Part shown: in pieces, positions 7,007-45,493 of the stretch
Position numbering within the stretch: the stretch's first letter is position 1
Layout: each line of letters starts with the position of its first letter
IMG/VR virus record: IMGVR_UViG_3300042544_001590
Span: 62,001 to 126,000 of that record
DNA length: 64,000 bases
Strand: one strand, 5' to 3'
Program-made: the position numbers and the translations under genes
Notes under the pieces: generated by a model
What the model was told of the DNA's origin: nothing
Database searches by the model: none
The model's input: only the letters and a program-made list of their open reading frames with translations

Positions 7007-7276
7007 TTATTGATTGCCGGAATCTGTTGGAATATCATTCCATTGTTTGATACATAATTGAGTTGGATATTCTTCCATGGGATAATCCACAATGTTGATT
7101 TGGTGGTCGAATTCACACATCCTACATTCCACCCATATGCATTGGTAATCGATCCCCTTCATGGATGTTGTCATACCCCCCGAATCAACTTCTATGTTAT
7201 CGCTTCCGCATTTGGGGCATGGTTTAGGTTCTTTTTTCGTTTCCATCAATCTATTTTCCACTCCTCCTCTTTCCAT
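7007..7276 (-). CDS. Lar-like zinc-ribbon protein
   Basis: PKPCPKCGS...IWVECRMC pattern. Confidence 0.5.
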   Translation of the reverse strand: MERGGVENRLMETKKEPKPCPKCGSDNIEVDSGGMTTSMKGIDYQCIWVECRMCEFDHQINIVDYPMEEYPTQLCIKQWNDIPTDSGNQ

Positions 7277-7446
7277 TGGTCATACCAGCTTTCCACTTCT
7301 TCCCATGTTAGATTCCAATCTTCACAGGACATGCAATCAGGATCAAGGCAATCGAAATATCCCGATGTTCCGCTCCACATGAGGAAACCCGTGGGACTCA
7401 CCAATCTCTCGTCGTTGAGCAATGCCTGTCTATGTTCCTCTTTCAT
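7246..7446 (-). CDS. small hypothetical protein
   Basis: ORF track; part of an overlapping minus-strand operon. Confidence 0.65.
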   Translation of the reverse strand: MKEEHRQALLNDERLVSPTGFLMWSGTSGYFDCLDPDCMSCEDWNLTWEEVESWYDQWKEEEWKID

Positions 7447-7670
7447 TTTCTCAATTCATCCACCAATTCCAAAGCGGCTTTGGCTTGATCCAATTCATCC
7501 TCCACATTTCCGTTCTTTTCAATTTCCTTAATCAGATCATGCAATGCGCTGTATAGCATGATGGATTCCGTCTCCAGCGTTCTACAGAACTCAGGAGTTT
7601 CCCCCGATGCTCTCTTTTGTCCAAAGGTTGGTTTAAAATGTTCTTCCGTTCTAGGTGTTCTTATGTGCAT
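7443..7670 (-). CDS. small hypothetical protein
   Basis: ORF track; 4-nt overlap with the next gene. Confidence 0.65.
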   Translation of the reverse strand: MHIRTPRTEEHFKPTFGQKRASGETPEFCRTLETESIMLYSALHDLIKEIEKNGNVEDELDQAKAALELVDELRK

Positions 7671-7676
7671 ATTATA

Positions 7677-7937
7677 TTATTTTATTGTTTCCCATATTTT
7701 ATCAACTCCCCCACAATCACATAGAAATGCGGGACCGGATAAGGCACACCATCCTTCCACCGATGAACAGCGGGGATCGTGTTCCACATGTTCATTCATG
7801 GTTTTCTGGATTGCCCATGCCGTGGGGAAGTCCAGAAAATCAGGACACTTGGACATACATTGTCGAACTTCTTCGGTTGTTTCCATATTATTATTCGTAT
7901 GGGGAATTGAGGATTTTTCCGCTTCTCCGTATTTCAC
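7677..7937 (-). CDS. small hypothetical protein
   Basis: ORF track; operon context. Confidence 0.6.
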   Translation of the reverse strand: MKYGEAEKSSIPHTNNNMETTEEVRQCMSKCPDFLDFPTAWAIQKTMNEHVEHDPRCSSVEGWCALSGPAFLCDCGGVDKIWETIK

Positions 7938-8127
7938 AGATCATTTCATTTAGGACTGAAGGACAGTGGGTGTTTTCAGGATATTCGTTGGAATTGAAAT
8001 AAAATATCTCCTCATTTTCCATTAATGTTGCTCTATATAATCTTTGAAATTCGCTCAAAGCTGGGGTGGTATCATCAACGTAATCCAGCACCCTTTTCCA
8101 TTTCTTGATTAATTCTTCGTTTGTCAT
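7891..8127 (-). CDS. small hypothetical protein
   Basis: ORF track; 4-nt overlap with the HAD gene. Confidence 0.65.
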   Translation of the reverse strand: MTNEELIKKWKRVLDYVDDTTPALSEFQRLYRATLMENEEIFYFNSNEYPENTHCPSVLNEMICEIRRSGKILNSPYE

Positions 8128-8648
8128 ACCATTTTCTCCTTTAGGAATTCCTTCACATCCTCCTCAAACCAATCCCCATCCTTTCCGTTTGCCCCGTAGT
8201 AATCCCTTACCTTGAGATAGCGATCCTCGTTAATTCCGATCAGGTTCACCTTACCCATGTTCTGCCTGTAGGGGAGATTATCAATGAGAACGTTGTCCTT
8301 GTGGGCAACCCCTTCCTTTTCCACATAGGCACTCCCCCCATAAGCGGTGGGGATCAGGTGTCTTTGGATTTCCTCCCTTGCAATGATATGATCCCTCTCA
8401 AATCCCCACCCCGCTTTCTCGTTGATGGTGTTGGCGTAATCGGTGGTGGATGTTGTTAAGATATATACGTTATCCTTTCCCACAAGTTCCCTTGCATAAT
8501 CAATCAGTCCTTGGGCGCAGGGTCTAATGATCGTGTAATAGGTGTTGAGATCATCCTCCAGAGTGAATTGGATATGTTCTTGGTTGGGATCACGTAGGAG
8601 GGTGTGAATAAGGCATTCATCGATGTCCCAGAAGATTTTGTTTATCAT
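8124..8648 (-). CDS. HAD-superfamily (FCP1/NIF-like) phosphatase
   Basis: WDIDECLIHT motif I, IIRP, YILTT motif II, LIDN motif IV. Confidence 0.8.
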   Translation of the reverse strand: MINKIFWDIDECLIHTLLRDPNQEHIQFTLEDDLNTYYTIIRPCAQGLIDYARELVGKDNVYILTTSTTDYANTINEKAGWGFERDHIIAREEIQRHLIPTAYGGSAYVEKEGVAHKDNVLIDNLPYRQNMGKVNLIGINEDRYLKVRDYYGANGKDGDWFEEDVKEFLKEKMV

Positions 8649-8652
8649 ATTT

Positions 8653-8853
8653 TTATTTTTTAAATGCTTTCTGGCAATCCTTTTCGGTGATTCCCAGCTT
8701 TTCGAAGAATTCCCCCAGCGTTATGTCCTTGGCGCAGATACCCACGCAACTGTCATACCACCCTCCGATGGAGAGCCTTTGGGCTGTCTTTGTCCATGTG
8801 ATGTCAATTCCGCTGTATTCCGCGTCCTCCGGTAGATAGATTGTCTTAGGCAT
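8653..8853 (-). CDS. small hypothetical protein
   Basis: ORF track; TTGACA-N16-TAAATT-N6-ATG promoter upstream. Confidence 0.75.
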   Translation of the reverse strand: MPKTIYLPEDAEYSGIDITWTKTAQRLSIGGWYDSCVGICAKDITLGEFFEKLGITEKDCQKAFKK

Positions 8854-8859
8854 GGATTC

Positions 8860-8887
8860 AATTTACCACTTCCTTCCCATTTGTCAA
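8860..8887 (-). promoter_or_regulatory. sigma70-type promoter TTGACA-N16-TAAATT, 6 nt before ATG
   Basis: Same 16-nt spacer at 9820-9847(+), 17682-17709(-), 19395-19422(-), 38490-38517(-), 41680-41707(-). Confidence 0.8.
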
Positions 8888-24977: not shown

Positions 24978-25702
24978 TAGTTTTCAAAATCGTTTGGATA
25001 ATAAGGGGAAATCTTGTTATCATTGTCGGTTCTATTTATCAGTGTCAGTCCACGGAAATCCTGTGACACGCCAAAGTAAATGGGAAAGTTCAAATCTCCC
25101 AGATAATGGAACACCCAAACCTTGGAACCCACTTCGGGAATACCAAACATTCCTTTAGATTTGTTGGTGAAATTATTTGATTTATATCCAAACGCATAGG
25201 GATTGCATTTCACACTAAAAACATCCAGAGGAGTTGCAAACGCATCAGATACCATAGTATCCCTGTTTTCATATAAAAATGAGGGGGAGAACGATCCTCC
25301 GCTCAGAGTGGGGACTTCCGTATTATTATTTTCATATGTTTCCGAATAGTTACTGTCCGTTATAACAGCCAAACCATCCCCATCTTGTTTGAAGTATCGT
25401 CCATTACCAGATTCACCCATGAGGGGATAACATGGTTCTGCCCATGGGATATGTGTTGAAATCTCTTCGTAAATCTTGATATCAACCCAAGTATCATCGG
25501 GGTTGTTGAGTCCGGGTCTTTGGACGTTCATCTCCTCATATTTCTCAAACCACTCGTCAAAGGGTTGGTTCGACAATTCGGGAATGAATATCTTAACCCG
25601 ATTCATTTTCAGGGGATCATTGTTCTTGACCACGATCCCACGGTAGAACGATTCGTCGTTCCTTCTCGCTTCATTACCCAATCCCGATCCGCGAATAAAC
25701 AC
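24977..25702 (-). CDS. gp5: baseplate hub gp5 N-terminal OB-fold part
   Basis: YRGIVVKNNDPLKMNRVKI, IPWAEP, IPEVGSKVWVF..GDLNFPIYFG. Confidence 0.8.
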   Translation of the reverse strand: MFIRGSGLGNEARRNDESFYRGIVVKNNDPLKMNRVKIFIPELSNQPFDEWFEKYEEMNVQRPGLNNPDDTWVDIKIYEEISTHIPWAEPCYPLMGESGNGRYFKQDGDGLAVITDSNYSETYENNNTEVPTLSGGSFSPSFLYENRDTMVSDAFATPLDVFSVKCNPYAFGYKSNNFTNKSKGMFGIPEVGSKVWVFHYLGDLNFPIYFGVSQDFRGLTLINRTDNDNKISPYYPNDFEN

Positions 25703-25723
25703 AACAATACTTAATAAGGTATC

Positions 25724-26866
25724 TTACATGACCAACATCAAAGGAGGGTCCATCGTGCCGTATCCACCTTCAACAAGGAAATTTTCAAGTTCTTTCTTCT
25801 CTTCCAAACCTTCTGAAAGAACGTTGGAACCATCAATGACCCCCCCTCCGGGTAGGGGGGTGTTGGATATCTTAGTGAGTATCCGACCCCACATAATCTT
25901 TGACATGGCCGTAGCGTATTCCAAAATCCATTTTTCCTTCACTAAATCCCTCAATGGTCTTTCCACATAACATGTGAGCAACCCATAGAATTGGGTATTC
26001 TTCGGCTGGGGAATCAAACGGAGATATTGTGTTCTTGCATCAAAATAGATGTCCCGACGAGTGGCAAACATTTTTTCGCGGGTATCAATCCAATCCTTGA
26101 CGGTGTGCCAAGACAGGATATCAAATCCATAGTTACCCAGCGAATAAGCATGATAACTTTGTTGTGCCATGGTTTGTTCAACGGAGAACAGTGTGTTTAC
26201 GCCCGTAGTAGAACCTTCCTCAAAGGCGATAACATCAACTACTTTACGGTAATCCATGACATCATAATCAAACATATTATTAAATGTGTTCACATCATCC
26301 TGTTGTTCACACTGTATTGTGAACGGTTTTTGGTAAGACTGTTGGAACAACACACCCAAACCAGCATCAAATTCCACGATAAGATCATACGTGGTTTGAT
26401 CAATGATCTGCATGGAAGTAATACCATCGGAAGGAACAGCACCACTCAATGCTGACGAAGCGGTGAAATATGCACTTGGAATCGTTGAAAGGGAAACATA
26501 CAAAGGTGTGGGAAGCGTAACTTCGTAATCCGGTTGTGGTCCTGTTCTTTTATCATTAAGCTTTTCAGATGGGGTGTAACCGGAATTTGCTACCGTAAAA
26601 AGGTGATCTAACCGCAAGCCTTTGTTACCCTCATATAATCGGCTGTCAAACAGAAGATATTCCTTAGTGTAACCACTATATACTGTATAGAAGTCAACCG
26701 CCATTGATATAGCTTCATACAACTGATCATAATGCAATTCCACATTAATCATAGGATGTCCCAAAGTTCTAAGGATACGTTCTCCAAGTCTTTGGTAGCA
26801 TTCTATTTTAGAATTCAGATTCGTTGACATGAATGCTGAAATCGGTTCCACTTGACATAAACTCAT
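25724..26866 (-). CDS. gp13: neck protein gp13-like
   Basis: LGHPMINVEL..DQLYEAI, WILEYATAMSK.MWG.IL.K, LPGGGVIDG. Confidence 0.85.
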   Translation of the reverse strand: MSLCQVEPISAFMSTNLNSKIECYQRLGERILRTLGHPMINVELHYDQLYEAISMAVDFYTVYSGYTKEYLLFDSRLYEGNKGLRLDHLFTVANSGYTPSEKLNDKRTGPQPDYEVTLPTPLYVSLSTIPSAYFTASSALSGAVPSDGITSMQIIDQTTYDLIVEFDAGLGVLFQQSYQKPFTIQCEQQDDVNTFNNMFDYDVMDYRKVVDVIAFEEGSTTGVNTLFSVEQTMAQQSYHAYSLGNYGFDILSWHTVKDWIDTREKMFATRRDIYFDARTQYLRLIPQPKNTQFYGLLTCYVERPLRDLVKEKWILEYATAMSKIMWGRILTKISNTPLPGGGVIDGSNVLSEGLEEKKELENFLVEGGYGTMDPPLMLVM

Positions 26867-26886
26867 AGTAGTATTTAATCAACCAT

Positions 26887-28572
26887 ATGAAATCAACGAA
26901 AAAATTAACATTGGAGGTCTTTATCCAAAGATCAAACGAAGCGCATAATAATTTTTATGACTATTCTAAATCAGAATATAAAAACGCAAATACTAAATTA
27001 ACCATAACTTGCCCAACCCATGGAGAATTCATACAGAAACCAGCGGATCACATGCGAGGATGTGGGTGTGTGTTATGTGGGAATTATAAAAACACGAGAT
27101 TGAAACCTTTTGAGCAATTCCTAGAAGAAGCTAATAAAAAACATGATAATTTTTATGATTATAGTAAAAGCATTTATATAAATTCCACCACTAAGATTAA
27201 CATAATTTGTCCTATTCATGGGGATTTCACACAAATTCCAAATTCTCATATTTCGGGTCAGGGATGTCCTAAATGTGGTCATTATAAAAATACAAATAAA
27301 AAGAACACCGAAGACTTTATTAAACGCTCTACGATTATACACAACAATAAATACGATTATTCAAAAGTTGAATATGATGGTAATAAGAAAAAGGTTATTA
27401 TAATATGCCCAACCCATGGAGAATTCATCCAAATTCCAAATGCACATTTACGGGGGGCTGGATGTTGGAACTGTAGTGTTGATTATAGAATGAACGAAAA
27501 AAGATCAAACAGTAAAGATTTTATAGAAAAAGCCAACATAGCCCATCAAAACAAATATGATTATTCATTAGTTAATTATTATAATAATTATCAAAAAATT
27601 CCCATAAAATGTCCTAAGCATGGGATATTCAATCAAAATCCGGGAAACCATTTACAAGGTGCTGGGTGTCCAAAATGCTCTTCAATTGAAAGTAAGTCTG
27701 AAACAAAAATAAAATCTATATTAGAGGAAACGGGAATCGATTTTATACAACAAGATAGAACTTTAATCAACCCATTTGAGATAGATTTCGTAATTCCTGA
27801 TTATAAAATTGGAATTGAGTTTAACGGTATTTACTATCATTCGGAAGATAATGGAGGTAAAAATAAAAAATACCATCTGAATAAAACAGATCGGTGTGAA
27901 AAAGAGGGATATCAATTAATCCATATTTTCGAAAATGAATACATACAAAAATATAATTTGTTGAGATTTAAAATAAAATCACTATTAAATAAAAATAAAT
28001 ATCGCATATTTGCTAGGAAGTGTATTGTCCGAGAAATAACACCTCAAGAGAAATGCAGATTTAATAAAAAATATCACATACAAGGGGATTCCCAATCATG
28101 TGTTAATTTGGGGTTGTTTTATAAAGAGAGGTTGGTTCAAGTTATGACTTTTTCTAAAAGAAGAAAAGCATTAGGTTCTAAACACGTTAAAGGTGAATAT
28201 GAACTTTCCAGAATGTCTTCTATGAAAGGATTTACCATTGTGGGTGGCGCATCCAAGCTATTAAAACATTTTGAGAAACATTATAATCCTAAGAAGTTAA
28301 TCTCTTATGCTGATAGAAGGTGGAGTAAAGGAGATGTGTATTATAAAATGGGGTTTTCATTTATTAGAAACACCCCACCAAATTATTGGTATTTTTATAA
28401 AAAACGCGCTGATAAGCCATTACACCACCGATACAAATTCGCTAAACATACTCTTGAAAAACAATTGGAAATATTTGACCCAAATTTAACAGAGTGGGAA
28501 AACATGAAAAACAATCATTATGATCGTATCTGGGACTCTGGTAATATGCTATTTGAAAAGGTGTATGATTAA
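26887..28572 (+). CDS. Hef-like free-standing homing endonuclease
   Basis: Four YDYSK...ICP.HG.F.Q.P..H..G.GC repeats, EIDFVIP...GIEFNG.YYH nuclease motif, C-terminal GGASKL..ISYADRRWS; antisense to the structural genes. Confidence 0.82.
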   Translation: MKSTKKLTLEVFIQRSNEAHNNFYDYSKSEYKNANTKLTITCPTHGEFIQKPADHMRGCGCVLCGNYKNTRLKPFEQFLEEANKKHDNFYDYSKSIYINSTTKINIICPIHGDFTQIPNSHISGQGCPKCGHYKNTNKKNTEDFIKRSTIIHNNKYDYSKVEYDGNKKKVIIICPTHGEFIQIPNAHLRGAGCWNCSVDYRMNEKRSNSKDFIEKANIAHQNKYDYSLVNYYNNYQKIPIKCPKHGIFNQNPGNHLQGAGCPKCSSIESKSETKIKSILEETGIDFIQQDRTLINPFEIDFVIPDYKIGIEFNGIYYHSEDNGGKNKKYHLNKTDRCEKEGYQLIHIFENEYIQKYNLLRFKIKSLLNKNKYRIFARKCIVREITPQEKCRFNKKYHIQGDSQSCVNLGLFYKERLVQVMTFSKRRKALGSKHVKGEYELSRMSSMKGFTIVGGASKLLKHFEKHYNPKKLISYADRRWSKGDVYYKMGFSFIRNTPPNYWYFYKKRADKPLHHRYKFAKHTLEKQLEIFDPNLTEWENMKNNHYDRIWDSGNMLFEKVYD

Positions 28573-28706
28573 TGTAACTCCACATTAATCATAGGATGTC
28601 CCAAGGTTCTTAAAATCCGCTCCCCCAAACGCTGGTAGCACTCAATCTTGGAATTGAGATTGGTGGACATGAAAGCGGAAATTGGTTCAACTTGGCAGAG
28701 ACTCAT
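28569..28706 (-). pseudogene. truncated duplicate of gp13 codons 1-45
   Basis: Translates to MSLCQVEPISAFMSTNLNSKIECYQRLGERILRTLGHPMINVELH*, identical to the gp13 N-terminus; has its own TAAATA-N5-ATG. Confidence 0.93.
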
Positions 28707-28737
28707 AGAATTATTTAACAAGATGCTAAATAATAAT

Positions 28738-29052
28738 ATGGAATCCAATAACGGCTCAACTTTTTATAATCCAAACACTTCTCGAAATTTCGTAACAACC
28801 ATTAATACTGGATTGTCCGGATTTCAGTCTTTTACTTGCTCTGAAGTATTGGTAATTAATAGAACTGGACAGGATGTTTATCTATATGATAGTGGTGACA
28901 CTGGGGATACAAACAGACTTCTAATTTTAGATGATGAGTCAATCGTAATCAGGGGAGTTAGCAATAGTTCCTCTTTAAGTGCTAAAACCGCTACTGGCAG
29001 TGGTGATTTATATTATCGCGCATCCAAATTCAGCAATTACAATCAAGGATAA
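28738..29052 (+). CDS. putative virion structural protein
   Basis: TAAATA-N5-ATG supports a start at 28738 (MESNNG); S/T/N-rich. Confidence 0.7.
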   Translation: MESNNGSTFYNPNTSRNFVTTINTGLSGFQSFTCSEVLVINRTGQDVYLYDSGDTGDTNRLLILDDESIVIRGVSNSSSLSAKTATGSGDLYYRASKFSNYNQG

Positions 29053-29888
29053 TGGCAGGGATACCGTCAATAGCAAATATTAATAGATTTATTGAATCTG
29101 GGCTTGGACGTTCTTTAGACCCAGACGCTAAAGGATACATTAATTCAGTTGTCGCTGCTGGTGGGACGGTTAGTGGGACGCAGAGGGCAGCAATCAACAC
29201 ATTCTACAAGACAGGAAAAGCCGATGGCTGGTATTCCTCTCTGAAACGCGTGTATCTGCCAATCTGGGGAGTTGCTGCACCCAACGCCATCGACATGATT
29301 GCGAGGGGAAGCGGCACGTTCACGGGCACTGTGACGCACGGAGCGGGATATGTTCAAAGCAACGGGACGACCGGGTATTTCCGCACAGGAACCGCGTTTT
29401 CAACAGAAGGGCTAAGCGCGGCTGATGGATACATCTTCGGGCTTCACTACACCGCGAACACCACGAATCCAGCGGTGTGCATCGGGTCGGGAAACACGAA
29501 CACCTGCTACTACTTCATGACGACCACAACCGCCACGGCGCGTTGGTGCAACTCTGCATCCGGCTCAAGCATCGCCACCACGCGGACAGGAATCTTTTCA
29601 TTCTCCCGCAAGTCAGGCGTGCGGACATTTTGGAGACGCGCAACAAGCGGCAGGACGGTGCTTGTAACATCTACCGACGCAGACGCCGGAACCATTTCCG
29701 CAAGCCCTGTTTTAGCAATGGCGAACAATGGAACCGACGTCGCCGCGACCTTTAACCCGCAGTTTTACGACGACGGGCAAAAGGGTGCTTATGGCTTTGG
29801 CCTTGGCCTAACAAACGCTCAGGACTTATCTTTCACGGCATCACTTAAAACACTTTGGGAAACCTGCACCGGACTTACACTACCATGA
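29052..29888 (+). CDS. putative fibre / receptor-binding protein
   Basis: G/T/A-rich beta-type sequence; GC-rich relative to flanks. Confidence 0.6.
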   Translation: MAGIPSIANINRFIESGLGRSLDPDAKGYINSVVAAGGTVSGTQRAAINTFYKTGKADGWYSSLKRVYLPIWGVAAPNAIDMIARGSGTFTGTVTHGAGYVQSNGTTGYFRTGTAFSTEGLSAADGYIFGLHYTANTTNPAVCIGSGNTNTCYYFMTTTTATARWCNSASGSSIATTRTGIFSFSRKSGVRTFWRRATSGRTVLVTSTDADAGTISASPVLAMANNGTDVAATFNPQFYDDGQKGAYGFGLGLTNAQDLSFTASLKTLWETCTGLTLP

Positions 29889-30901: not shown

Positions 30902-32706
30902 ACCTCCGCTGGTGGTGCTTCAGGAACATCCGCTGGTGGTTCTTCCCCTCCTAGATCAGCTTCTTCCCCATCACCTATTGCTGCTGGTCCGCCGCCGAAG
31001 TCTGGAACGCCGCCACCACCGCCTCCACCACCCATATCAGGCATACCACCTTCGCCACCACCTTCAGCTTGTTGAGCTAAAAGATTGCGCCACTCGGGAC
31101 CCGATGACCTGATTTGCTCGATTTCAAACATGTGTTCCGCTTCCACCTTCTTAAAGTGTAGGTTGGCAAGGATATCGGAATCTTTCCAATCCAGATATTT
31201 CTTCATAGCATAGATTGTGGATACCATTTCATTACCCGTGATATTATTGAAAGTCTCGATCTTGAGATTGAGCTTCTGGCTCTCCCGCATATCATAGAAA
31301 TTGGTGGGAACATTGAATTCCACGCGGATATTGTCATCGAACAAATCCCAATCATCGAACATGTCCTTGAACTTGAGGTGTGTGATAAACGCTCTCTTGA
31401 TACCTTGGGCAAAGCGTTGTTGTTGACGAATGATCATCTTGGCAAACTTCAGTTCTTCCCGAAGCATCTCCGTTCCATCATTATAACCCGTTTCATTATT
31501 CAAACGAGAAGTTGGAGTCTTGAGAGAACGATACAATTTCTTGATGAACCAATCCAGAGCATCCAAATTACCATCCGACATTTGACCACCAAATGTCTCA
31601 ACAGTAGTTGCTTCTTGTCCCTGTCTCTTGGCAAACCAGAACGAATCCAAGGTGGATTGCGGGGCGTATTTCTTGACGATATCCCCTTGGTCGATGTCAA
31701 AGGTCTTGGTTGACCAGTATTGGCTCTGTAGCTTGCGTAGGTAGGCTTCCGCTTGAGGAACGGGCAATCTCCCCACATCCACGTTAAAGAGGAAGCGGAG
31801 GGGCGCGTGAACCATCCTGTGGATCACCACGGAATCCTCAATCATGGAAAGCTGTCTATAAGCTCTGCGGCAATTCTCAATGAAAGGAATAATAAAATCT
31901 TTGGTTTCATTGTATTGCCCACTGTTCACATAAAGGACTTGGTTCTGTTCAAAGGGAATGTATTCGTAGCGTTCCACTTTTTTGTTATCAACGCTGGAAA
32001 AGATCGGCTTCTTGTAAATGAACGCTTTCACCAACATCGTCTGGATGTTGTCATATACGGGATCAAATTGTTCGGCAGGAAGATTCTTGATAGCCACAAC
32101 CCCTTGTTTAATATAATCATCTTTTAGAATCAATTCAAAGAACAGTTCCCCTTCAATGAGAAATTGTCTAAAATAATTCCACCCATTGTCTTCCAGTTCC
32201 ATCATGGCAACGAAACGGGAGAATTCCTTCTCAATCTCTTCTTTCTTTTCTGATTCCAGATCGGTGTTGCGGATTGTGAGGGTTACAATCTCCCCATTCT
32301 CATCCACATTGATCGTCTCATCACAAATCTCATCCATGGCATCTGCCACTTCGGAGTAAGCGGCAATCATGCGGTAATCCCGCAAACGTCCGGGTTTCTC
32401 CTCCGAAGCTTGGGAATACATCAAATCCGTAAAGGACTTGTCTTGATAGATGGCGGAAAATGCCGTGTTGTTCCAGTCGTTATTAAGAGCTACGGAATTA
32501 CGAGCAATCGCTTCCGGTCTGCGTAAACCAATCTTCTGGAAATATTTATATTTTGTATTCTTCGCTTCGTCAGGAGTCTTCTCAATGAAATTCCCACGAT
32601 TCTTCAGATAGGACTGCATGTTCCTATCAAAAGTGGAACCTTTACCGTCATTACTAACGTAGGATTTATTTGAAGATTGTGTAGAAGAACTGTCGGAACC
32701 CGCCAT
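30898..32706 (-). CDS. gp20: portal protein gp20
   Basis: EVADAMDEICDE, QLSMIEDSVVIHRMVHAP.R, DSFWFAKRQG, EELKFAKMI.RQQQRF; Gly-rich acidic tail. Confidence 0.93.
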   Translation of the reverse strand: MAGSDSSSTQSSNKSYVSNDGKGSTFDRNMQSYLKNRGNFIEKTPDEAKNTKYKYFQKIGLRRPEAIARNSVALNNDWNNTAFSAIYQDKSFTDLMYSQASEEKPGRLRDYRMIAAYSEVADAMDEICDETINVDENGEIVTLTIRNTDLESEKKEEIEKEFSRFVAMMELEDNGWNYFRQFLIEGELFFELILKDDYIKQGVVAIKNLPAEQFDPVYDNIQTMLVKAFIYKKPIFSSVDNKKVERYEYIPFEQNQVLYVNSGQYNETKDFIIPFIENCRRAYRQLSMIEDSVVIHRMVHAPLRFLFNVDVGRLPVPQAEAYLRKLQSQYWSTKTFDIDQGDIVKKYAPQSTLDSFWFAKRQGQEATTVETFGGQMSDGNLDALDWFIKKLYRSLKTPTSRLNNETGYNDGTEMLREELKFAKMIIRQQQRFAQGIKRAFITHLKFKDMFDDWDLFDDNIRVEFNVPTNFYDMRESQKLNLKIETFNNITGNEMVSTIYAMKKYLDWKDSDILANLHFKKVEAEHMFEIEQIRSSGPEWRNLLAQQAEGGGEGGMPDMGGGGGGGGVPDFGGGPAAIGDGEEADLGGEEPPADVPEAPPAEV

Positions 32707-41756: not shown

Positions 41757-43208
41757 ATGGCTAGAATTTACAAAACAGATGAAGTGATCAAACTTTTCAA
41801 GGATAAACATGGGGATCGGTATGATTATTCTAAATTTGTTTATCCCGGTAAAAAGAATGATAAAGGGATTGTGATCTGTAGAGAGCATGGTGAATTTCTG
41901 ACTTCCAAACAATATCATTTAAAAGGGTGTGGTTGCCCCGAATGTGTTGGTGTTCCAAGAGGAGGTTTTAAACGGAGAACCCAAGAACAATTCATGGAAG
42001 AATTGAAAGAAAAATATCTAAAATTTTATGATTATGATTTTTCAAAATTCATATATAAGAACAATACTACCAAAGGAACTATCATATGCCCCAAACACGG
42101 GGAATTTCAAATCACACCCAAACACCTTTTGATGAGACAGTATGGTTGTTCGGAGTGTTCAGGGAAGAAAAGATTAACAATTGAAAAGATCAGGGAATTG
42201 ACATCCTATCAAATTCCCGATCAGGAATACACCAATAATAAAACACATATTAAAGCTGTTTGTGAATTGCACGGGGAATGGTTGGTGCGACCAGATAACC
42301 TACTTCATGCTAAAACGAGGTGTCCTGTATGTGCGGAGAATCTATCCAAGATTGAAGAAGAACTTAGGGAATTTGTTAAAACAGAGTTGGACGTTACCAT
42401 TATCACAAATGATAAACAAATTCTAGATAAAAAAGAATTGGATATCCTATCCCACAAACATAACATTGCAATTGAAATGAATGGTTTGTTTTGTCATTCG
42501 GAGGAAGGAGGTAAGGACAAACATTACCACCTACACAAGACGAATAAGTGCTTAGAGTCTGGTATTCGTTTATTTCATATATTTGAGGATGAATGGCGGA
42601 ATAAACAGGAGATTTGGAAATCCATTATTAGATATAATTTTAAAATGGTTCCCAATAAAATCCATGCTAGAAAATGTGAAATCAGATTGGTTGATAATTT
42701 CACCACCAAACAATTCTTAACAGATAATCATCTACAAGGATATTCTAATTGTTCTGTTTCTGTGGGACTTTATCATAATGATCAATTGGTATCCATATTA
42801 ACTTTTGGTAAGAGTAGATTCGATAAAAACGTGGAATGGGAGCTTATCCGTTTCGCCAATGTATTGAATACATCAGTAGTCGGTGGATTCCAGAAATTGT
42901 TCAAACACTTCATCAAGACTTACAATCCAAATTCCATTGTATCATATGCAGATAAACGATACTCAATTGGTAATGTATATCGTAGTGTTGGGATGGAAGA
43001 GATTGAAAACGATGCTGTTAATTATTATTATTTCAATAAGCGAGAAGGTGTTAGATATTCTCGCCATCAGTTCCAGAAACATAAGCTGAAAGATAAGTTA
43101 CCAATCTTTGATGAGTCCTTGAGTGAGGGTGATAATATGAAATTAAATGATTTTTACAGAATCTATGATTGTGGTAATTATAAATTTGTGTGGAGGAAAT
43201 CCTTGTAA
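41757..43208 (+). CDS. Hef-like free-standing homing endonuclease
   Basis: YDYSK/IC..HGEF/GC.EC repeats, ELDI...IAIEMNG.F.H, VGGFQKL...IVSYADKRYS; paralog of 26887..28572. Confidence 0.82.
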   Translation: MARIYKTDEVIKLFKDKHGDRYDYSKFVYPGKKNDKGIVICREHGEFLTSKQYHLKGCGCPECVGVPRGGFKRRTQEQFMEELKEKYLKFYDYDFSKFIYKNNTTKGTIICPKHGEFQITPKHLLMRQYGCSECSGKKRLTIEKIRELTSYQIPDQEYTNNKTHIKAVCELHGEWLVRPDNLLHAKTRCPVCAENLSKIEEELREFVKTELDVTIITNDKQILDKKELDILSHKHNIAIEMNGLFCHSEEGGKDKHYHLHKTNKCLESGIRLFHIFEDEWRNKQEIWKSIIRYNFKMVPNKIHARKCEIRLVDNFTTKQFLTDNHLQGYSNCSVSVGLYHNDQLVSILTFGKSRFDKNVEWELIRFANVLNTSVVGGFQKLFKHFIKTYNPNSIVSYADKRYSIGNVYRSVGMEEIENDAVNYYYFNKREGVRYSRHQFQKHKLKDKLPIFDESLSEGDNMKLNDFYRIYDCGNYKFVWRKSL

Positions 43209-43235
43209 TAATTGATTCCGGTATTAAGTATTACT

Positions 43236-44012
43236 ATGTTCAAGAAACAATTCAAATTATACGTCACCATCAATAAAATCAATGGTAAGGTCTATGGTGG
43301 AAAACATTATTGGTATCCAAAAACCAGATACATGGGATCAGGTTACAGGTTGAGACAGTCTATCAACAAATACGGGAGAGAGAATTTTGAAACAAGATGG
43401 TTTAATTTAAAGATTGATACCCCAGAAGATTTGGATAGATTGGAAATAAAATTAATCAGGAGATTACATCATAAATTCGGTAAGAGCAATTGTTATAATA
43501 TTCAAAAAGGTGGTAGGGGTGGTTATTACACCGAATACATGGACGAGAATGAATTGGAAGAGGTTTATTCTAAAATAAGCAATGGTCTTAAAGAAAAATA
43601 TAAAGACCCAGAACATTACGAGAAATGGAAGGAGTCCCTAAAGAAAAGGAAAGCTACGATGGATTTGAGAAAATCCAAAGAAGGTAAGTCTGAAAAAGAA
43701 ATCAAAAAGAGACAGTTCATGCTAGATAATGGGTTTGGCATAGTCACGTATGAAATATTATATCCCGATGGTAAATCTGTTGTTGAGAGTAAAACGCTCA
43801 GAGATTTTCTAACTGAGTATAAAACAGAAGATCATGTGTTTTCTCGTATCAGATCAAATGGTGAGTATATGTTTAAGAAGAGAACCAAGCTCACAAAACA
43901 TCCATTTCCAGTTAAGACAATTATAAAATATATATCAGAGATACGAACATTCAATACCTATAAAAACGAGGAAACCCGAGGGTCTTCGGCACCTCGGGTT
44001 TCAGATTTTTAG
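43236..44012 (+). CDS. Seg-like GIY-YIG homing endonuclease
   Basis: LYVTINKINGKVYGGKH...YMGSG..L..SINKYGRENF; convergent with gp23, as segD is in T4; TAAGTA-N5-ATG at 43236. Confidence 0.8.
   Translation: MFKKQFKLYVTINKINGKVYGGKHYWYPKTRYMGSGYRLRQSINKYGRENFETRWFNLKIDTPEDLDRLEIKLIRRLHHKFGKSNCYNIQKGGRGGYYTEYMDENELEEVYSKISNGLKEKYKDPEHYEKWKESLKKRKATMDLRKSKEGKSEKEIKKRQFMLDNGFGIVTYEILYPDGKSVVESKTLRDFLTEYKTEDHVFSRIRSNGEYMFKKRTKLTKHPFPVKTIIKYISEIRTFNTYKNEETRGSSAPRVSDF
43960..44010. terminator. bidirectional intrinsic terminator between seg-like gene and gp23
   Basis: 11-bp stem GAAACCCGAGG/CCTCGGGTTTC with T-tracts nearby on both strands. Confidence 0.8.
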
Positions 44013-44032: not shown

Positions 44033-45493
44033 TTACAGGTAAGTACTAACCGATCCGGGCGTAAACGCAGTTCCAAGACCTTTTACGATGATAAGGTGGT
44101 AATAGAGCGATGCACCAAAAATGTTGTTCACAATCCCGTAACGAGTCATAAGACCCACACGAGGAGCGAAATCATTTGGTCCAATCGTTCTTTGCACCAT
44201 GATCGGGATATACGGACAGTATATCAGACCAGTATCATAGTATTCAGAACCCTTGTAACCCAACAGCGCATATTCGACACCAGCACCGGAATTCGGAGCA
44301 TTGGTGTAGTAGTTAGGCGAGTAGAGCGAGGAGTTCTGAACTTCAGTCCTAGTATCACGATACACAGTCCAGCGGCTACCAACAGTACCAACTTTTGCGA
44401 TACCAACACCAGCCGTCGAAACGGTGCCATTGATTTCGTAAACCTTAAAGTCGGGAAGCATTTCGAGGATGCTGCAAACGCGGGGAGTGGCGATAACAAA
44501 GTTAGCGGCACCTCTACGGTTACGAGCAGCCATACGACCACTTTCGATAATAAGGCGTTGATAGAAGGTAAGATTCCTTTCAGCAGTCCAACGTCCATCC
44601 GCACTAACAGGACTCCAGATGGAGAAACCTGCGCCAGCACCAGCATTGAAGGCTGTTTGGATCATACGCATCACAACTTCGCGGTCGATTTCGGCTTGGA
44701 TTTCATACGACATTGCGTTCGTAAGTTCTCCATCGATATCGATACCGTTCATGTTTTTGATGTCTTGTTCCAACTCAACACTCCAACGAGTAGCAAGCCT
44801 ACGTGTTCCGGCCTCAACAGCGGTCTTTTCAAACTTGAGTTCGATCTGAGGGATTTTGCCCGTCAATTCGTAGTTACTCAGGAGTTCTGCAATACCACGG
44901 TCTTGATCTGCGAACGTCCACTCGGCATGACCCGAAAGGAAACCAGCAGATGTGCCAGTGAAACGTGTGTCCAGAAGTTGAAAACCAAGTTCGTCGTCGG
45001 GAAGACCTGCGCCACCGGAGTAAGCGTCGGTACCGTTACCACGAGAGGTGGAGGTGAAGGATTTACCGTCGATTCCATCAGCACCAAGGGTATCACCTTG
45101 ATAAGCATAACGGAGAGCGAAGGCAAGTCCGACTGGACCACCCATGGGTTGAACACCCACGATTTCGTTAGAGATCAATTCAGGGAAAGTACGCCGAATC
45201 ATAGGAATCAGAATCTTTGGCAGACGAGCATCACCGGGGGCATAGTTATCGCTGTTAGCGATACCATTGCCAAGGGAAGCAGCCGCACCAAACACACCAC
45301 CGCTAGCGGCAGTATTCGATTCTTGGTAGCACCACTGTTCTTGGTTTTCCAGAAGCATGGCAGTAGTCTTGTAAACGTGTTCGTTACGAATAGCTGGGAT
45401 CGAGTCCGAGCTATAATCGAGAACTTTACGCCACTTGGCAACTGCTTGTTGCATCTTGGAGCCTTGGATATCAGTAGATGGTAGATTATTCAT
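44033..45493 (-). CDS. gp23: major capsid protein gp23
   Basis: LIPMIRRTFP.LI...VGVQPMGGPVGLAFALRY, ELEQDIKNM.GID...EL...MSYEIQAEIDRE, YCPYIP, PRVGLMTRYG. Confidence 0.97.
   Translation of the reverse strand: MNNLPSTDIQGSKMQQAVAKWRKVLDYSSDSIPAIRNEHVYKTTAMLLENQEQWCYQESNTAASGGVFGAAASLGNGIANSDNYAPGDARLPKILIPMIRRTFPELISNEIVGVQPMGGPVGLAFALRYAYQGDTLGADGIDGKSFTSTSRGNGTDAYSGGAGLPDDELGFQLLDTRFTGTSAGFLSGHAEWTFADQDRGIAELLSNYELTGKIPQIELKFEKTAVEAGTRRLATRWSVELEQDIKNMNGIDIDGELTNAMSYEIQAEIDREVVMRMIQTAFNAGAGAGFSIWSPVSADGRWTAERNLTFYQRLIIESGRMAARNRRGAANFVIATPRVCSILEMLPDFKVYEINGTVSTAGVGIAKVGTVGSRWTVYRDTRTEVQNSSLYSPNYYTNAPNSGAGVEYALLGYKGSEYYDTGLIYCPYIPIMVQRTIGPNDFAPRVGLMTRYGIVNNIFGASLYYHLIIVKGLGTAFTPGSVSTYL

What the first reader, a model, noticed from the sequence alone, without database searches (positions are those of the whole stretch)
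26732..28706. Homing endonuclease invasion snapshot: gp13 codons 1-45 are duplicated with 28 nucleotide differences, all synonymous
Seen: 28569-28706 (minus) encodes the same 45 residues as the start of gp13 (26732-26866), then TAA where the full gene has TAT. By hand alignment 28 of 135 nt differ and no amino acid changes; a 23-nt identical stretch (CACATTAATCATAGGATGTCCCA) lies next to the junction. Both copies keep TAAATA-N5-ATG. The Hef-like gene fills the gap in the opposite orientation and its stop overlaps the orphan's stop. The functional copy also has TTGACA-N16-TTTAAT-N7-ATG on the + strand pointing into the endonuclease, and the TTGACA is absent from the orphan. Known: free-standing T4 endonucleases spread by intronless homing and avoid self-cleavage through silent changes in the target. 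Inference: the element arrived with a replacement 5' end from a diverged gp13 allele, rescuing the essential gene, and the cut site is near codon 45. The orphan peptide may still be made and could interfere with neck assembly.
Basis: partly seen in the sequence, partly recalled or inferred. Interest (0 to 1): 0.75.

Follow-up and report, generated by a model that had tools for sequence, protein, structure and literature searches.

The report
Endonuclease cassette replaced neck gene start
A selfish endonuclease gene entered the neck-protein gene of an uncultured lake phage together with a foreign copy of the gene's first 45 codons, leaving the phage's own first 45 codons stranded beside it; the same pattern recurs in other phages.

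Summary
Codons 1-45 of the T4 gp13 homologue (25724-26866, minus) recur at 28572-28706 with 28 differences, all synonymous. The full repeat is 149 nt at 80% identity. An intact 561-aa Hef-like endonuclease gene lies between the copies, antisense to gp13.

HE-less relatives give the direction. The orphan is the phage's native 5' end: 93% identical to the closest relatives, and matching them at 27 of 28 differing sites. The functional gene's 5' end is foreign: 79% to those relatives, AT-richer, and with states seen in distant alleles at 22 of 28 sites. The working gene is a mosaic whose breakpoint (gene nt 93-168) brackets the orphan's end (nt 137).

Contigs from several lake samples span both junctions. 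No intron was found.

"All synonymous" is ordinary. These 45 residues are almost invariant across the clade, where alleles differ by about 23 nt and 2 aa.

Two unrelated loci show the same architecture (baseplate wedge gene, NAPRTase gene). Direct repeats flanking this endonuclease family are enriched, 20 loci against 1.

The closest known analogue is the mitochondrial mobile-ORF gene hybrid. The cut site, immunity of the working copy and expression of the orphan remain untested.

The parts
25724..26866 (-). Functional neck-protein gene (T4 gp13 homologue, 380 aa), a mosaic of a foreign 5' end and a native body
   Evidence: PDB sequence search hits T4 gp13 (9mkb, 9lu4) at E=1.4e-12 in two segments. 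PHROG 211 head-tail adaptor, E=6e-23. Full-length alignment to 47 relatives.
26730..26878 (-). Repeat copy A: imported 5' end (codons 1-45 plus 12 nt of leader) of the functional gene
   Evidence: 79% nt identity to the closest relatives against 87% for the gene body. GC 34% and GC3 0.31, against 0.53 in the orphan.
26699..26774 (-). Mosaic breakpoint interval in the functional gene (gene nt 93-168); it brackets the orphan's end at nt 137
   Evidence: Maximum chi-square on 119 informative sites. Left of the break 9 sites are distant-allele-like and 3 native-like; right of it 10 and 97. None of 5000 permutations reached the observed value.
26867..26886 (.). 20-nt spacer between the divergent gp13 and HE start codons; holds the TAAATA-N5-ATG signal of gp13 (26872-26877, minus strand)
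26887..28572 (+). Intact free-standing homing endonuclease gene (561 aa). It has four DUF723/treble-clef zinc modules, a Vsr/I-Bth0305I-like nuclease core (about 27664-28011) and a Mom/GNAT-like C-terminal domain
   Evidence: PHROG 559 E=3e-165 and PHROG 3339 'homing endonuclease' E=2e-97. Pfam DUF723, DUF4379, Mom, and weak MTES_1575/Vsr. 3r3p (I-Bth0305I) E=0.004. The C-terminus has the natural family length. GC 30.7% against 39.4% for the genome.
26730..28569 (.). The 1,840-bp inserted block in one of its equivalent phasings: foreign gp13 5' end + spacer + HE
   Evidence: Repeat spacing of 1840 nt. The block is absent from the closest relatives L003-L012, which have an uninterrupted gp13.
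28564..28593 (.). Perfect 12-bp inverted repeat with a 6-nt loop exactly at the HE-stop/orphan junction. The homology between the two copies starts at TAATG (28570-28574), which contains the HE stop codon
   Evidence: It is one of only four such hairpins in the 207-kb genome. RNA dG is -12.4/-13.0 kcal/mol, against -3.7/-7.7 at the matching place of copy A.
28569..28706 (-). Orphan ORF: the native codons 1-45 of gp13, then TAA
   Evidence: 93% nt identity to L003-L010. Its state equals a close relative's at 27 of the 28 sites that differ from copy A.
28570..28718 (-). Repeat copy B (native remnant), including the TAAATA-N5-ATG signal (28712-28717)
28723..29052 (+). Native divergent neighbour of gp13 (109 aa, unknown function). 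A homologous small gene sits in this position in relatives
   Evidence: tblastn hits in L032 and L036-L040. The positional equivalent ('MSFESNNG...', about 98 aa) is present in L003-L028.

Best explanation
A 1.84-kb AT-rich cassette was copied from a co-infecting, more distant phage into this phage's gp13 gene at about gene nt 137. The cassette holds a Hef-like free-standing homing endonuclease gene, a 20-nt spacer, and the first roughly 135-155 nt of a foreign gp13 allele.

Proposed course of events:
1. The endonuclease, sitting divergently upstream of gp13 in the donor, cut the recipient's gp13 shortly after codon 45.
2. The gene-body side of the break invaded the homologous donor gene and copied leftwards through the donor's 5' end and the endonuclease gene.

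The result is a complete chimeric gp13 (foreign 5' end, native body) that keeps the essential function. The phage's own codons 1-45, with their start signal, are stranded tail-to-tail against the endonuclease stop codon. Once formed, the orphan and the gene body can serve as two homology arms for ordinary homing into related phages.

Shown: the duplication, which copy is native, the mosaic breakpoint, the intact endonuclease, the junction sequence, presence in several samples, and recurrence elsewhere. Inferred: the cleavage itself, its position, the repair pathway, and resistance of the chimeric allele.
For: Direction of the event:
- The orphan is 93% identical to the closest HE-less relatives; the functional 5' end is 79%.
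- At the 28 differing sites the orphan matches a close relative at 27. The functional copy matches distant alleles at 22, and L018/L019/L046 at 18.

One event rather than two:
- The functional gene is a mosaic with its breakpoint between gene nt 93 and 168. 0 of 5000 permutations reached the observed value. The interval brackets the orphan's end at nt 137.

Foreign unit:
- HE GC is 30.7% and the imported 5' end 34.2%, against 40.3% for the orphan and 42.1% for the gene body.

Endonuclease:
- It is full length and belongs to the HE families PHROG 559/3339.
- It is absent from the ten closest relatives.
- Two other copies of the family lie in the same genome.

Junction:
- It falls at the natural HE stop, with TAATG microhomology.

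Real DNA:
- Independent contigs span both junctions.

Recurrence:
- L084 (baseplate wedge gene; orphan native-like, HE antisense, orphan 5 nt from the HE stop).
- L203 (NAPRTase gene; orphan native-like, HE in sense orientation).
- Direct repeats flank the HE in 20 of 149 loci at E<=0.01, against 1 locus in inverted orientation.

Precedent:
- One-sided, microhomology-joined DSB repair during T4 intron homing (Parker et al. 1999, as summarised in PMC2988022).
Against: - No donor carrying this endonuclease next to an undisturbed gp13 was found. Nothing above about 50% identity turned up in IMG/VR or the JGI metagenome contigs outside this lineage.
- Cleavage activity and specificity are untested, and the nuclease core matches known structures only weakly (E=0.004).
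- In two loci the junction lies at or within 5 nt of the HE stop codon. That is tidier than a random illegitimate join should be. It hints that the cassette may already have been a defined unit (two-armed homing) rather than a first-time invasion.
- The junction region is only moderately conserved at nucleotide level: 0.79-0.82, against a gene mean of 0.755 and a maximum of 0.92 elsewhere.
Confidence: 0.75

Rival explanations
1. Passenger model. The block entered by general illegitimate or homologous recombination between co-infecting phages. The endonuclease made no cut; it is simply cargo at a recombination hotspot upstream of gp13.
For: The region upstream of gp13 is variable among relatives, with several different neighbour genes and extra genes in the window. 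No cleavage data exist. A 48%-identical HE sits downstream of gp13 in L034-L036 without any duplication.
Against: The same orphan / HE / replaced-5'-end architecture recurs at three unrelated genes, always with an HE of this family in the middle. Direct flanking repeats are enriched 20 to 1 over inverted ones. The functional gene's breakpoint coincides with the orphan's end, which fits a single break.
Confidence: 0.13
2. In-place duplication. The insertion duplicated 149 nt of the phage's own gp13, like a target-site duplication, and the functional copy later drifted or was recoded at silent sites.
For: The two copies encode identical peptides. 6 of the 28 functional-copy states are seen in no other sampled allele.
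Against: All divergence would have to lie on one copy, since the orphan matches close relatives at 27 of 28 sites. 22 of 28 functional-copy states pre-exist in distant alleles. This segment diverges 21% from the nearest relatives, against about 13% in the adjoining body. GC3 drops from 0.53 to 0.31, in step with the AT-rich HE.
Confidence: 0.05
3. Split gene or intron. The orphan is exon 1 and is spliced, or trans-joined, to the gene body. Alternatively, the arrangement is an assembly chimera of two strains.
For: Two copies of a gene start flank an endonuclease gene, as at intron-containing phage genes.
Against: The downstream gene is complete, with its own start codon and start signal. The orphan duplicates sequence rather than complementing it. 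The HE is antisense. There was no Rfam match at E<=1 over 25500-29500. Contigs from at least three runs and a second IMG/VR sample span both junctions without differences.
Confidence: 0.02

Closest known systems
Mobile-ORF (mORF) gene hybrids of fungal mitochondria: Allomyces macrogynus atp6, and Glomus atp6/atp9/cox2/nad3 (PMC3630166)
   Same: An endonuclease ORF sits inside a conserved gene together with a foreign duplicate of the gene's end. That duplicate keeps the gene functional. The displaced native end stays next to it and is closer in nucleotides to the nearest relative than the inserted copy is, while the proteins are nearly or fully identical. This matches the pattern seen here.
   Different: There the 3' (C-terminal) end is replaced, and the ORF is in sense, often in phase with the gene. 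The endonucleases are GIY-YIG or LAGLIDADG, and the genome is organellar. Here the 5' end with its start signal is replaced. The endonuclease is a DUF723/Vsr-like Hef-type enzyme and is antisense (sense in L203). The host is a T4-like phage.
Intronless homing by free-standing T4 endonucleases (SegF, SegG, MobE, Hef of phage U5; review PMC2988022; details of Hef from memory)
   Same: A free-standing endonuclease gene lies between or beside essential genes. It is variably present among close relatives. Flanking markers from the donor are co-converted, producing mosaic neighbour genes.
   Different: Classical cases have homology on both sides and leave no duplicated gene fragment. Here one side was joined without homology, inside the coding sequence, leaving an orphan.
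[quoted passage not shown]
   Same: Homology is present on one side only, and the junction forms at a microhomology. It was proposed as the route by which mobile elements invade new sites.
   Different: That was a laboratory construct with an intron-borne enzyme. This is a natural product, fixed in a wild phage population, with a free-standing enzyme.
Genes-in-pieces caused by endonuclease insertion (Aeh1 nrdA split by mobE; PMC3045599 listed; details from memory)
   Same: A free-standing endonuclease gene lies inside an essential phage gene, and the gene's function is retained.
   Different: There the gene is split into two complementary ORFs whose products reassemble. Here the gene is whole and the extra piece is redundant.

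Membership tests
Free-standing homing endonuclease gene (Hef-like / DUF723 + Vsr-like nuclease family) | Protein belongs to a recognised homing-endonuclease sequence family | tested here: met
   PHROG 559 E=3e-165 and PHROG 3339 'homing endonuclease' E=2e-97. The homologous region in Bacillus phage AR9 is annotated 'Hef-like homing endonuclease'.
Free-standing homing endonuclease gene (Hef-like / DUF723 + Vsr-like nuclease family) | Recognisable nuclease catalytic core | tested here: inconclusive
   Matches to I-Bth0305I (3r3p, E=0.004) and Vsr (E about 1). Pfam MTES_1575 and Vsr score below their curated cut-offs. The acidic and His motifs align, but the catalytic residues were not verified.
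Free-standing homing endonuclease gene (Hef-like / DUF723 + Vsr-like nuclease family) | Present or absent among otherwise close relatives | tested here: met
   The ten closest loci (L003-L012, gp13 94% aa) lack it. It is present in L049 and in runs X1, X2, X5 and X8.
Free-standing homing endonuclease gene (Hef-like / DUF723 + Vsr-like nuclease family) | Co-conversion of flanking donor sequence | tested here: met
   Mosaic gp13 with its breakpoint at gene nt 93-168. The flank is AT-rich and foreign-like.
Free-standing homing endonuclease gene (Hef-like / DUF723 + Vsr-like nuclease family) | Site-specific cleavage of the endonuclease-less allele and resistance of the carrier allele | not testable with these tools
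   Needs expressed protein and DNA substrates.
mORF-type gene-end replacement (mitochondrial gene hybrids) | Foreign duplicate of a gene end keeps the gene whole, and the displaced native end is retained beside the endonuclease ORF | tested here: met
   The same is seen in L084 and L203.
mORF-type gene-end replacement (mitochondrial gene hybrids) | 3' end replaced, with the ORF in sense and in phase or co-transcribed with the gene | tested here: not met
   Here the 5' end is replaced and the ORF is antisense, with its own start 20 nt from the gp13 start.
mORF-type gene-end replacement (mitochondrial gene hybrids) | GIY-YIG or LAGLIDADG endonuclease | tested here: not met
   Pfam and PHROG place the protein in the DUF723/Hef-like group.
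Group I/II intron- or intein-borne homing endonuclease | Ribozyme or intein surrounding the endonuclease, with the host gene interrupted and restored by splicing | tested here: not met
   No Rfam hit at E<=1. gp13 is complete on its own, and the ORF is on the opposite strand.
T4 gp13 neck protein family (the target gene) | Sequence homology to T4 gp13 and a place in the head/neck/baseplate gene block | tested here: met
   PDB 9mkb/9lu4 gp13 at E=1.4e-12. N- and C-terminal segments align. The neighbours are a gp5-like OB-fold protein and the gp20-type portal.

The most novel reading that the evidence does not exclude
Hef-like/DUF723 endonucleases of phages travel as composite cassettes that carry their own replacement for the start (or end) of the gene they cut. 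This would let a free-standing endonuclease gene live inside an essential coding sequence with neither intron nor intein: a third solution, so far described only for mitochondrial mORFs.

In L203 the endonuclease stop codon lies inside the imported gene start and is created by its one amino-acid change. That suggests the two parts have co-evolved as a unit.

The stranded native start keeps the genome's start signal (TAAATA-N5-ATG). It could therefore drive antisense transcription through the endonuclease gene, or make a 45-residue neck-protein fragment. The orphan would then be a working part, not just a scar.
Probability: 0.35. Interest if true: 0.75.

Novelty: new variant of a known kind. 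Interest (0 to 1): 0.55.

Why it matters
- It gives a natural, datable footprint of how a free-standing homing endonuclease enters a new site in a phage genome. The displaced orphan marks where the break was and which allele was resident.
- Orphan gene starts next to endonuclease genes could therefore be used to map endonuclease target sites and donor-recipient relations in uncultured phages without any biochemistry.
- It shows a route by which the start of an essential structural gene, with its expression signals, is swapped between phages that differ by 20% in DNA. This is one concrete mechanism of phage mosaicism.
- Recurrence at three unrelated genes, together with the excess of flanking direct repeats, suggests this is a regular outcome for this widespread endonuclease family rather than an accident.

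Tried and rejected
- GenBank phages. blastn of the locus and tblastn of gp13 found no close relative. Only the capsid protein places the phage as a distant T4-like, about 33% identical to cyanophage gp23.
- Search for the donor. The endonuclease protein was scanned in IMG/VR and in JGI metagenome contigs. Nothing above about 50% identity turned up outside this lineage.
- Flanking duplications at the other two endonuclease copies of the genome: none found.
It was not called by the consensus scan, and promoter-like sites are not above shuffles.
- The idea that the insertion site is the most conserved nucleotide stretch of gp13. It is not; the region at nt 585-620 is.
- Intron or splicing. No Rfam match.
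- Fold-back hairpin as a general junction signature. It is strong in the window, has a 9-bp palindrome of different make-up in L203, and is absent in L084. It is left unexplained.
- Literature. Five full-text searches found no phage example of a replaced 5' gene end with an orphan. The Sandegren 2005 (Hef) and Parker 1999 papers could not be opened, so statements about them rest on a review and on memory.
- First attempt at the flank-repeat scan timed out and was rerun.
Full report
**What is there**

The window is part of a 207,489-bp IMG/VR phage record with terminal repeats (window = bases 62001-126000). The record comes from lake water. It is a distant T4-like phage: the major capsid protein is about 33% identical to cyanophage gp23, and a gp20-type portal and a gp5-like OB-fold protein lie nearby.

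The gene at 25724-26866 (minus, 380 aa) is a true homologue of T4 neck protein gp13. It hits PDB 9mkb/9lu4 at E=1.4e-12, with both an N-terminal segment (residues 26-72) and a C-terminal segment aligned. It also hits PHROG 211.

**The observation**

The gene's first 45 codons recur at 28572-28706 (minus). 28 of 135 nt differ, all synonymous, and a TAA follows. The full repeat is 149 nt at 80% identity, 26730-26878 against 28570-28718.

An intact 561-aa ORF (26887-28572, plus strand) lies between the copies. Its features:
- four DUF723/treble-clef zinc modules;
- a weakly recognisable Vsr/I-Bth0305I-like nuclease core;
- a Mom/GNAT-like C-terminal domain;
- very strong matches to the PHROG homing-endonuclease families 559 and 3339.

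The ORF's stop overlaps the orphan's stop by 2 nt. Its C-terminus has the normal family length.

**Is it real DNA?**

- Logan contigs from two lake-water runs of different studies cover 25000-27672 and 27643-29282/29934 without a single difference.
- A third, independent freshwater run has contigs across both junctions.
- IMG/VR contig L049, from another sample, carries neighbour genes, orphan and endonuclease at 100% identity.
- The contig breaks fall inside the endonuclease's internal repeats, not at the gp13 repeat.
- No run showed a form that skips the insert.

**Which copy is native?**

47 related loci were fetched. The ten closest (gp13 94% aa, gp5-like 96%) have an uninterrupted gp13 and no endonuclease.

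- Against these ten, the orphan is 92-93% identical in nucleotides.
- The functional gene's first 135 nt are only 79-80% identical.
- The next 265 nt of the functional gene are 87% identical.

At the 28 sites where the two copies differ:
- the orphan has the state of a close relative at 27;
- the functional copy has a state found in more distant alleles at 22, and in L018/L019/L046 at 18;
- 6 functional-copy states are unique.

A maximum chi-square test on 119 informative sites puts one breakpoint in the functional gene between nt 93 and 168. To its left, 9 sites are distant-like and 3 native-like. To its right, 10 and 97. None of 5000 permutations reached that value. The orphan ends at nt 137, inside that interval.

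Composition agrees with a foreign origin. The endonuclease gene is 30.7% GC and the imported 5' end 34.2%. The orphan is 40.3% and the gene body 42.1%. GC3 of the two 45-codon copies is 0.31 and 0.53.

So the orphan is the resident gene start, and the working start came in with the endonuclease.

**Why all differences are silent**

The 45 residues are nearly invariant across the whole clade, with only positions 6 and 34 varying among relatives down to 79% identity. Seventeen distinct alleles differ on average by 23 nt but 2.1 aa in this stretch. The functional copy also differs from L003 by 28 nt and 0 aa.

The silent-only pattern therefore shows that both copies diverged as working genes before they met. 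It is not evidence for recoding after the event or for selected immunity. It also means the orphan has decayed little since insertion. One natural variant (run X8) carries four more silent differences, some shared with HE-less alleles, plus GAG to TAG at codon 43.

**The junction**

Homology between the copies starts at TAATG (28570-28574 and 26730-26734). The endonuclease's TAA stop lies within this 5-nt microhomology.

The junction forms a perfect 12-bp inverted repeat with a 6-nt loop (28564-28593). It is one of only four such hairpins in the genome. Its left arm is the last endonuclease codons and its right arm the antisense of gp13 codons 38-42. I cannot decide between fold-back priming at a break, an RNA 3' hairpin for the two convergent ORFs, and chance.

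Relative to native-type alleles, the functional copy differs at gene nt 129, 132, 138, 147, 148, 150 and 156. It is then identical to L003 up to nt 203. This fits a conversion tract ending roughly 20 nt past the orphan's end.

**Mechanism proposed**

One double-strand break in the recipient's gp13 at or just after nt 137. The gene-body side was repaired homologously on a donor carrying the endonuclease divergently upstream of its gp13. The far end was joined by microhomology to the unresected break end.

Since degradation can only remove sequence, the retained orphan sets the break at or after nt 137. The end of the foreign tract (before about nt 168-204) bounds it on the other side.

One-sided, microhomology-joined repair has been shown experimentally for T4 intron homing (summarised in PMC2988022). 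The cleavage, its position and the resistance of the chimeric allele are inferences.

The donor was not found. No endonuclease above about 50% identity exists outside this lineage in IMG/VR or JGI metagenome contigs.

**Recurrence**

I scanned 149 loci (120 distinct) holding homologues of the endonuclease for repeats between the 700 nt before and after the ORF. Direct repeats were found in 6 loci at E<=1e-6, 10 at 1e-4 and 20 at 0.01. Inverted repeats were found in 0, 0 and 1.

Two cases were worked out with HE-less relatives.

- L084. A baseplate-wedge gene (PHROG 6/219) has a 137-nt duplicate of its upstream region plus 26 codons. The endonuclease is antisense. The orphan ends 5 nt from the endonuclease stop. 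The orphan's N-terminus (MANKGISYNSKNF...) is that of the relatives, while the working gene starts MSKKISYSSKNF... and differs from relatives again right at the junction.
- L203. A NAPRTase gene has its first ~14 codons duplicated. The endonuclease is in sense orientation between the orphan and the gene. The orphan has the relatives' His7 and their silent states, and the working copy has Lys7. The endonuclease's TAA stop lies inside the imported start and is made by that very codon change.

L059 has a 49-nt duplicate of a tail-sheath 3' end. L092 has a duplicated terminator hairpin with compensatory stem changes.

The other two endonuclease copies in the window's own genome have no such repeats.

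**Comparison with what is known**

The closest described analogue is the mitochondrial mobile-ORF gene hybrid (Allomyces atp6; Glomus atp6, atp9, cox2, nad3). There, an endonuclease ORF sits beside an inserted foreign C-terminal copy. The displaced native C-terminus is closer to the sister species in nucleotides, and the proteins are identical or nearly so (PMC3630166).

The case here differs in several ways:
- the 5' end and its start signal are replaced;
- the endonuclease family differs;
- the endonuclease is antisense;
- the genome is a phage.

Intronless homing of T4 Seg/Mob/Hef enzymes shares the free-standing gene and the co-conversion, but leaves no orphan. Five literature searches found no phage example. 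That is not proof that none exists.

**Verdict**

Its side claims (immunity by the silent changes, a specific promoter, a harmful peptide) are unsupported or untested.

I rate it a new variant of a known kind, of moderate interest. The interest is raised by the recurrence and by the use of orphans as footprints of endonuclease target sites.

Noticed in passing
whole genome; in the window e.g. 26872-26877(-), 28712-28717(-), portal start near 32706(-), 30227(+): TAAATA (mostly [CT]TAAATA) lies exactly 5 nt before the ATG of 34 ORFs of at least 100 aa, and 6 nt before 7 more. It often occurs on both strands of about 34-nt divergent intergenic regions. It resembles the T4 late promoter TATAAATA, but the fixed distance to the start codon suggests leaderless late mRNAs or a combined start signal. 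The endonuclease and the small neighbour gene lack it.
   Followed up: partly
window 28564-28593: A perfect 12-bp hairpin lies exactly at the endonuclease-stop/orphan junction. It is one of four in the 207-kb genome. RNA dG is about -12 to -13 kcal/mol on either strand.
   Followed up: partly
window 28644 (runs X2 and X5): Low-depth contigs match the orphan side only from 28644 rightwards. They continue leftwards into sequence found neither in the genome nor in any fetched locus. This may be a second kind of junction inside gp13, near codon 21, in a co-occurring variant.
   Followed up: no
window 41757-43208 and 43212-44012, next to the major capsid gene 44033-45493: A second Hef-like endonuclease (483 aa, 36% identical, DUF723 + Mom-like) is followed 4 nt later by a 266-aa ORF. 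By eye that ORF has a GIY-YIG-like start, but Pfam gives no significant family. Both are wedged against the capsid gene, with no flanking duplication.
   Followed up: partly
window 29052-29888: A 278-aa ORF with 53.5% GC in a 39% GC genome. It has no Pfam or PHROG match and is absent from this position in all relatives examined.
   Followed up: no
L034-L036, about 7192-8874: In relatives with 62% identical gp13, a 48%-identical member of the same endonuclease family sits about 60 nt downstream of gp13 in sense orientation. The gp13 neighbourhood has therefore been colonised at least twice, at different sites.
   Followed up: no
L051, 3' end of the endonuclease ORF: The last 28 residues of the endonuclease (IFDPNLTEWENMQANGYNRFWDCGNFVF) are present twice in tandem. 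This is another duplication at an endonuclease 3' boundary.
   Followed up: no
L092 3905-3965 and 5655-5715: The endonuclease is flanked by two copies of a terminator-like hairpin whose stems differ by compensatory changes (GCGGAGAA/TTCTCCGC against GAGAGAA/TTCTCTC).
   Followed up: no
L059 5838-7727: The tail sheath appears as two ORFs (389 + 183 aa) beside the endonuclease. A 49-nt duplicate of the sheath's 3' end lies on the other side of the endonuclease.
   Followed up: no
genome 1-241 and 207368-207489; genome 135813-136041 and 142717-142946 (outside the window): The record's 'terminal repeats' are arrays of a 57-nt tandem unit. A separate 230-nt direct repeat at 85% identity lies 6.9 kb apart elsewhere in the genome.
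   Followed up: no
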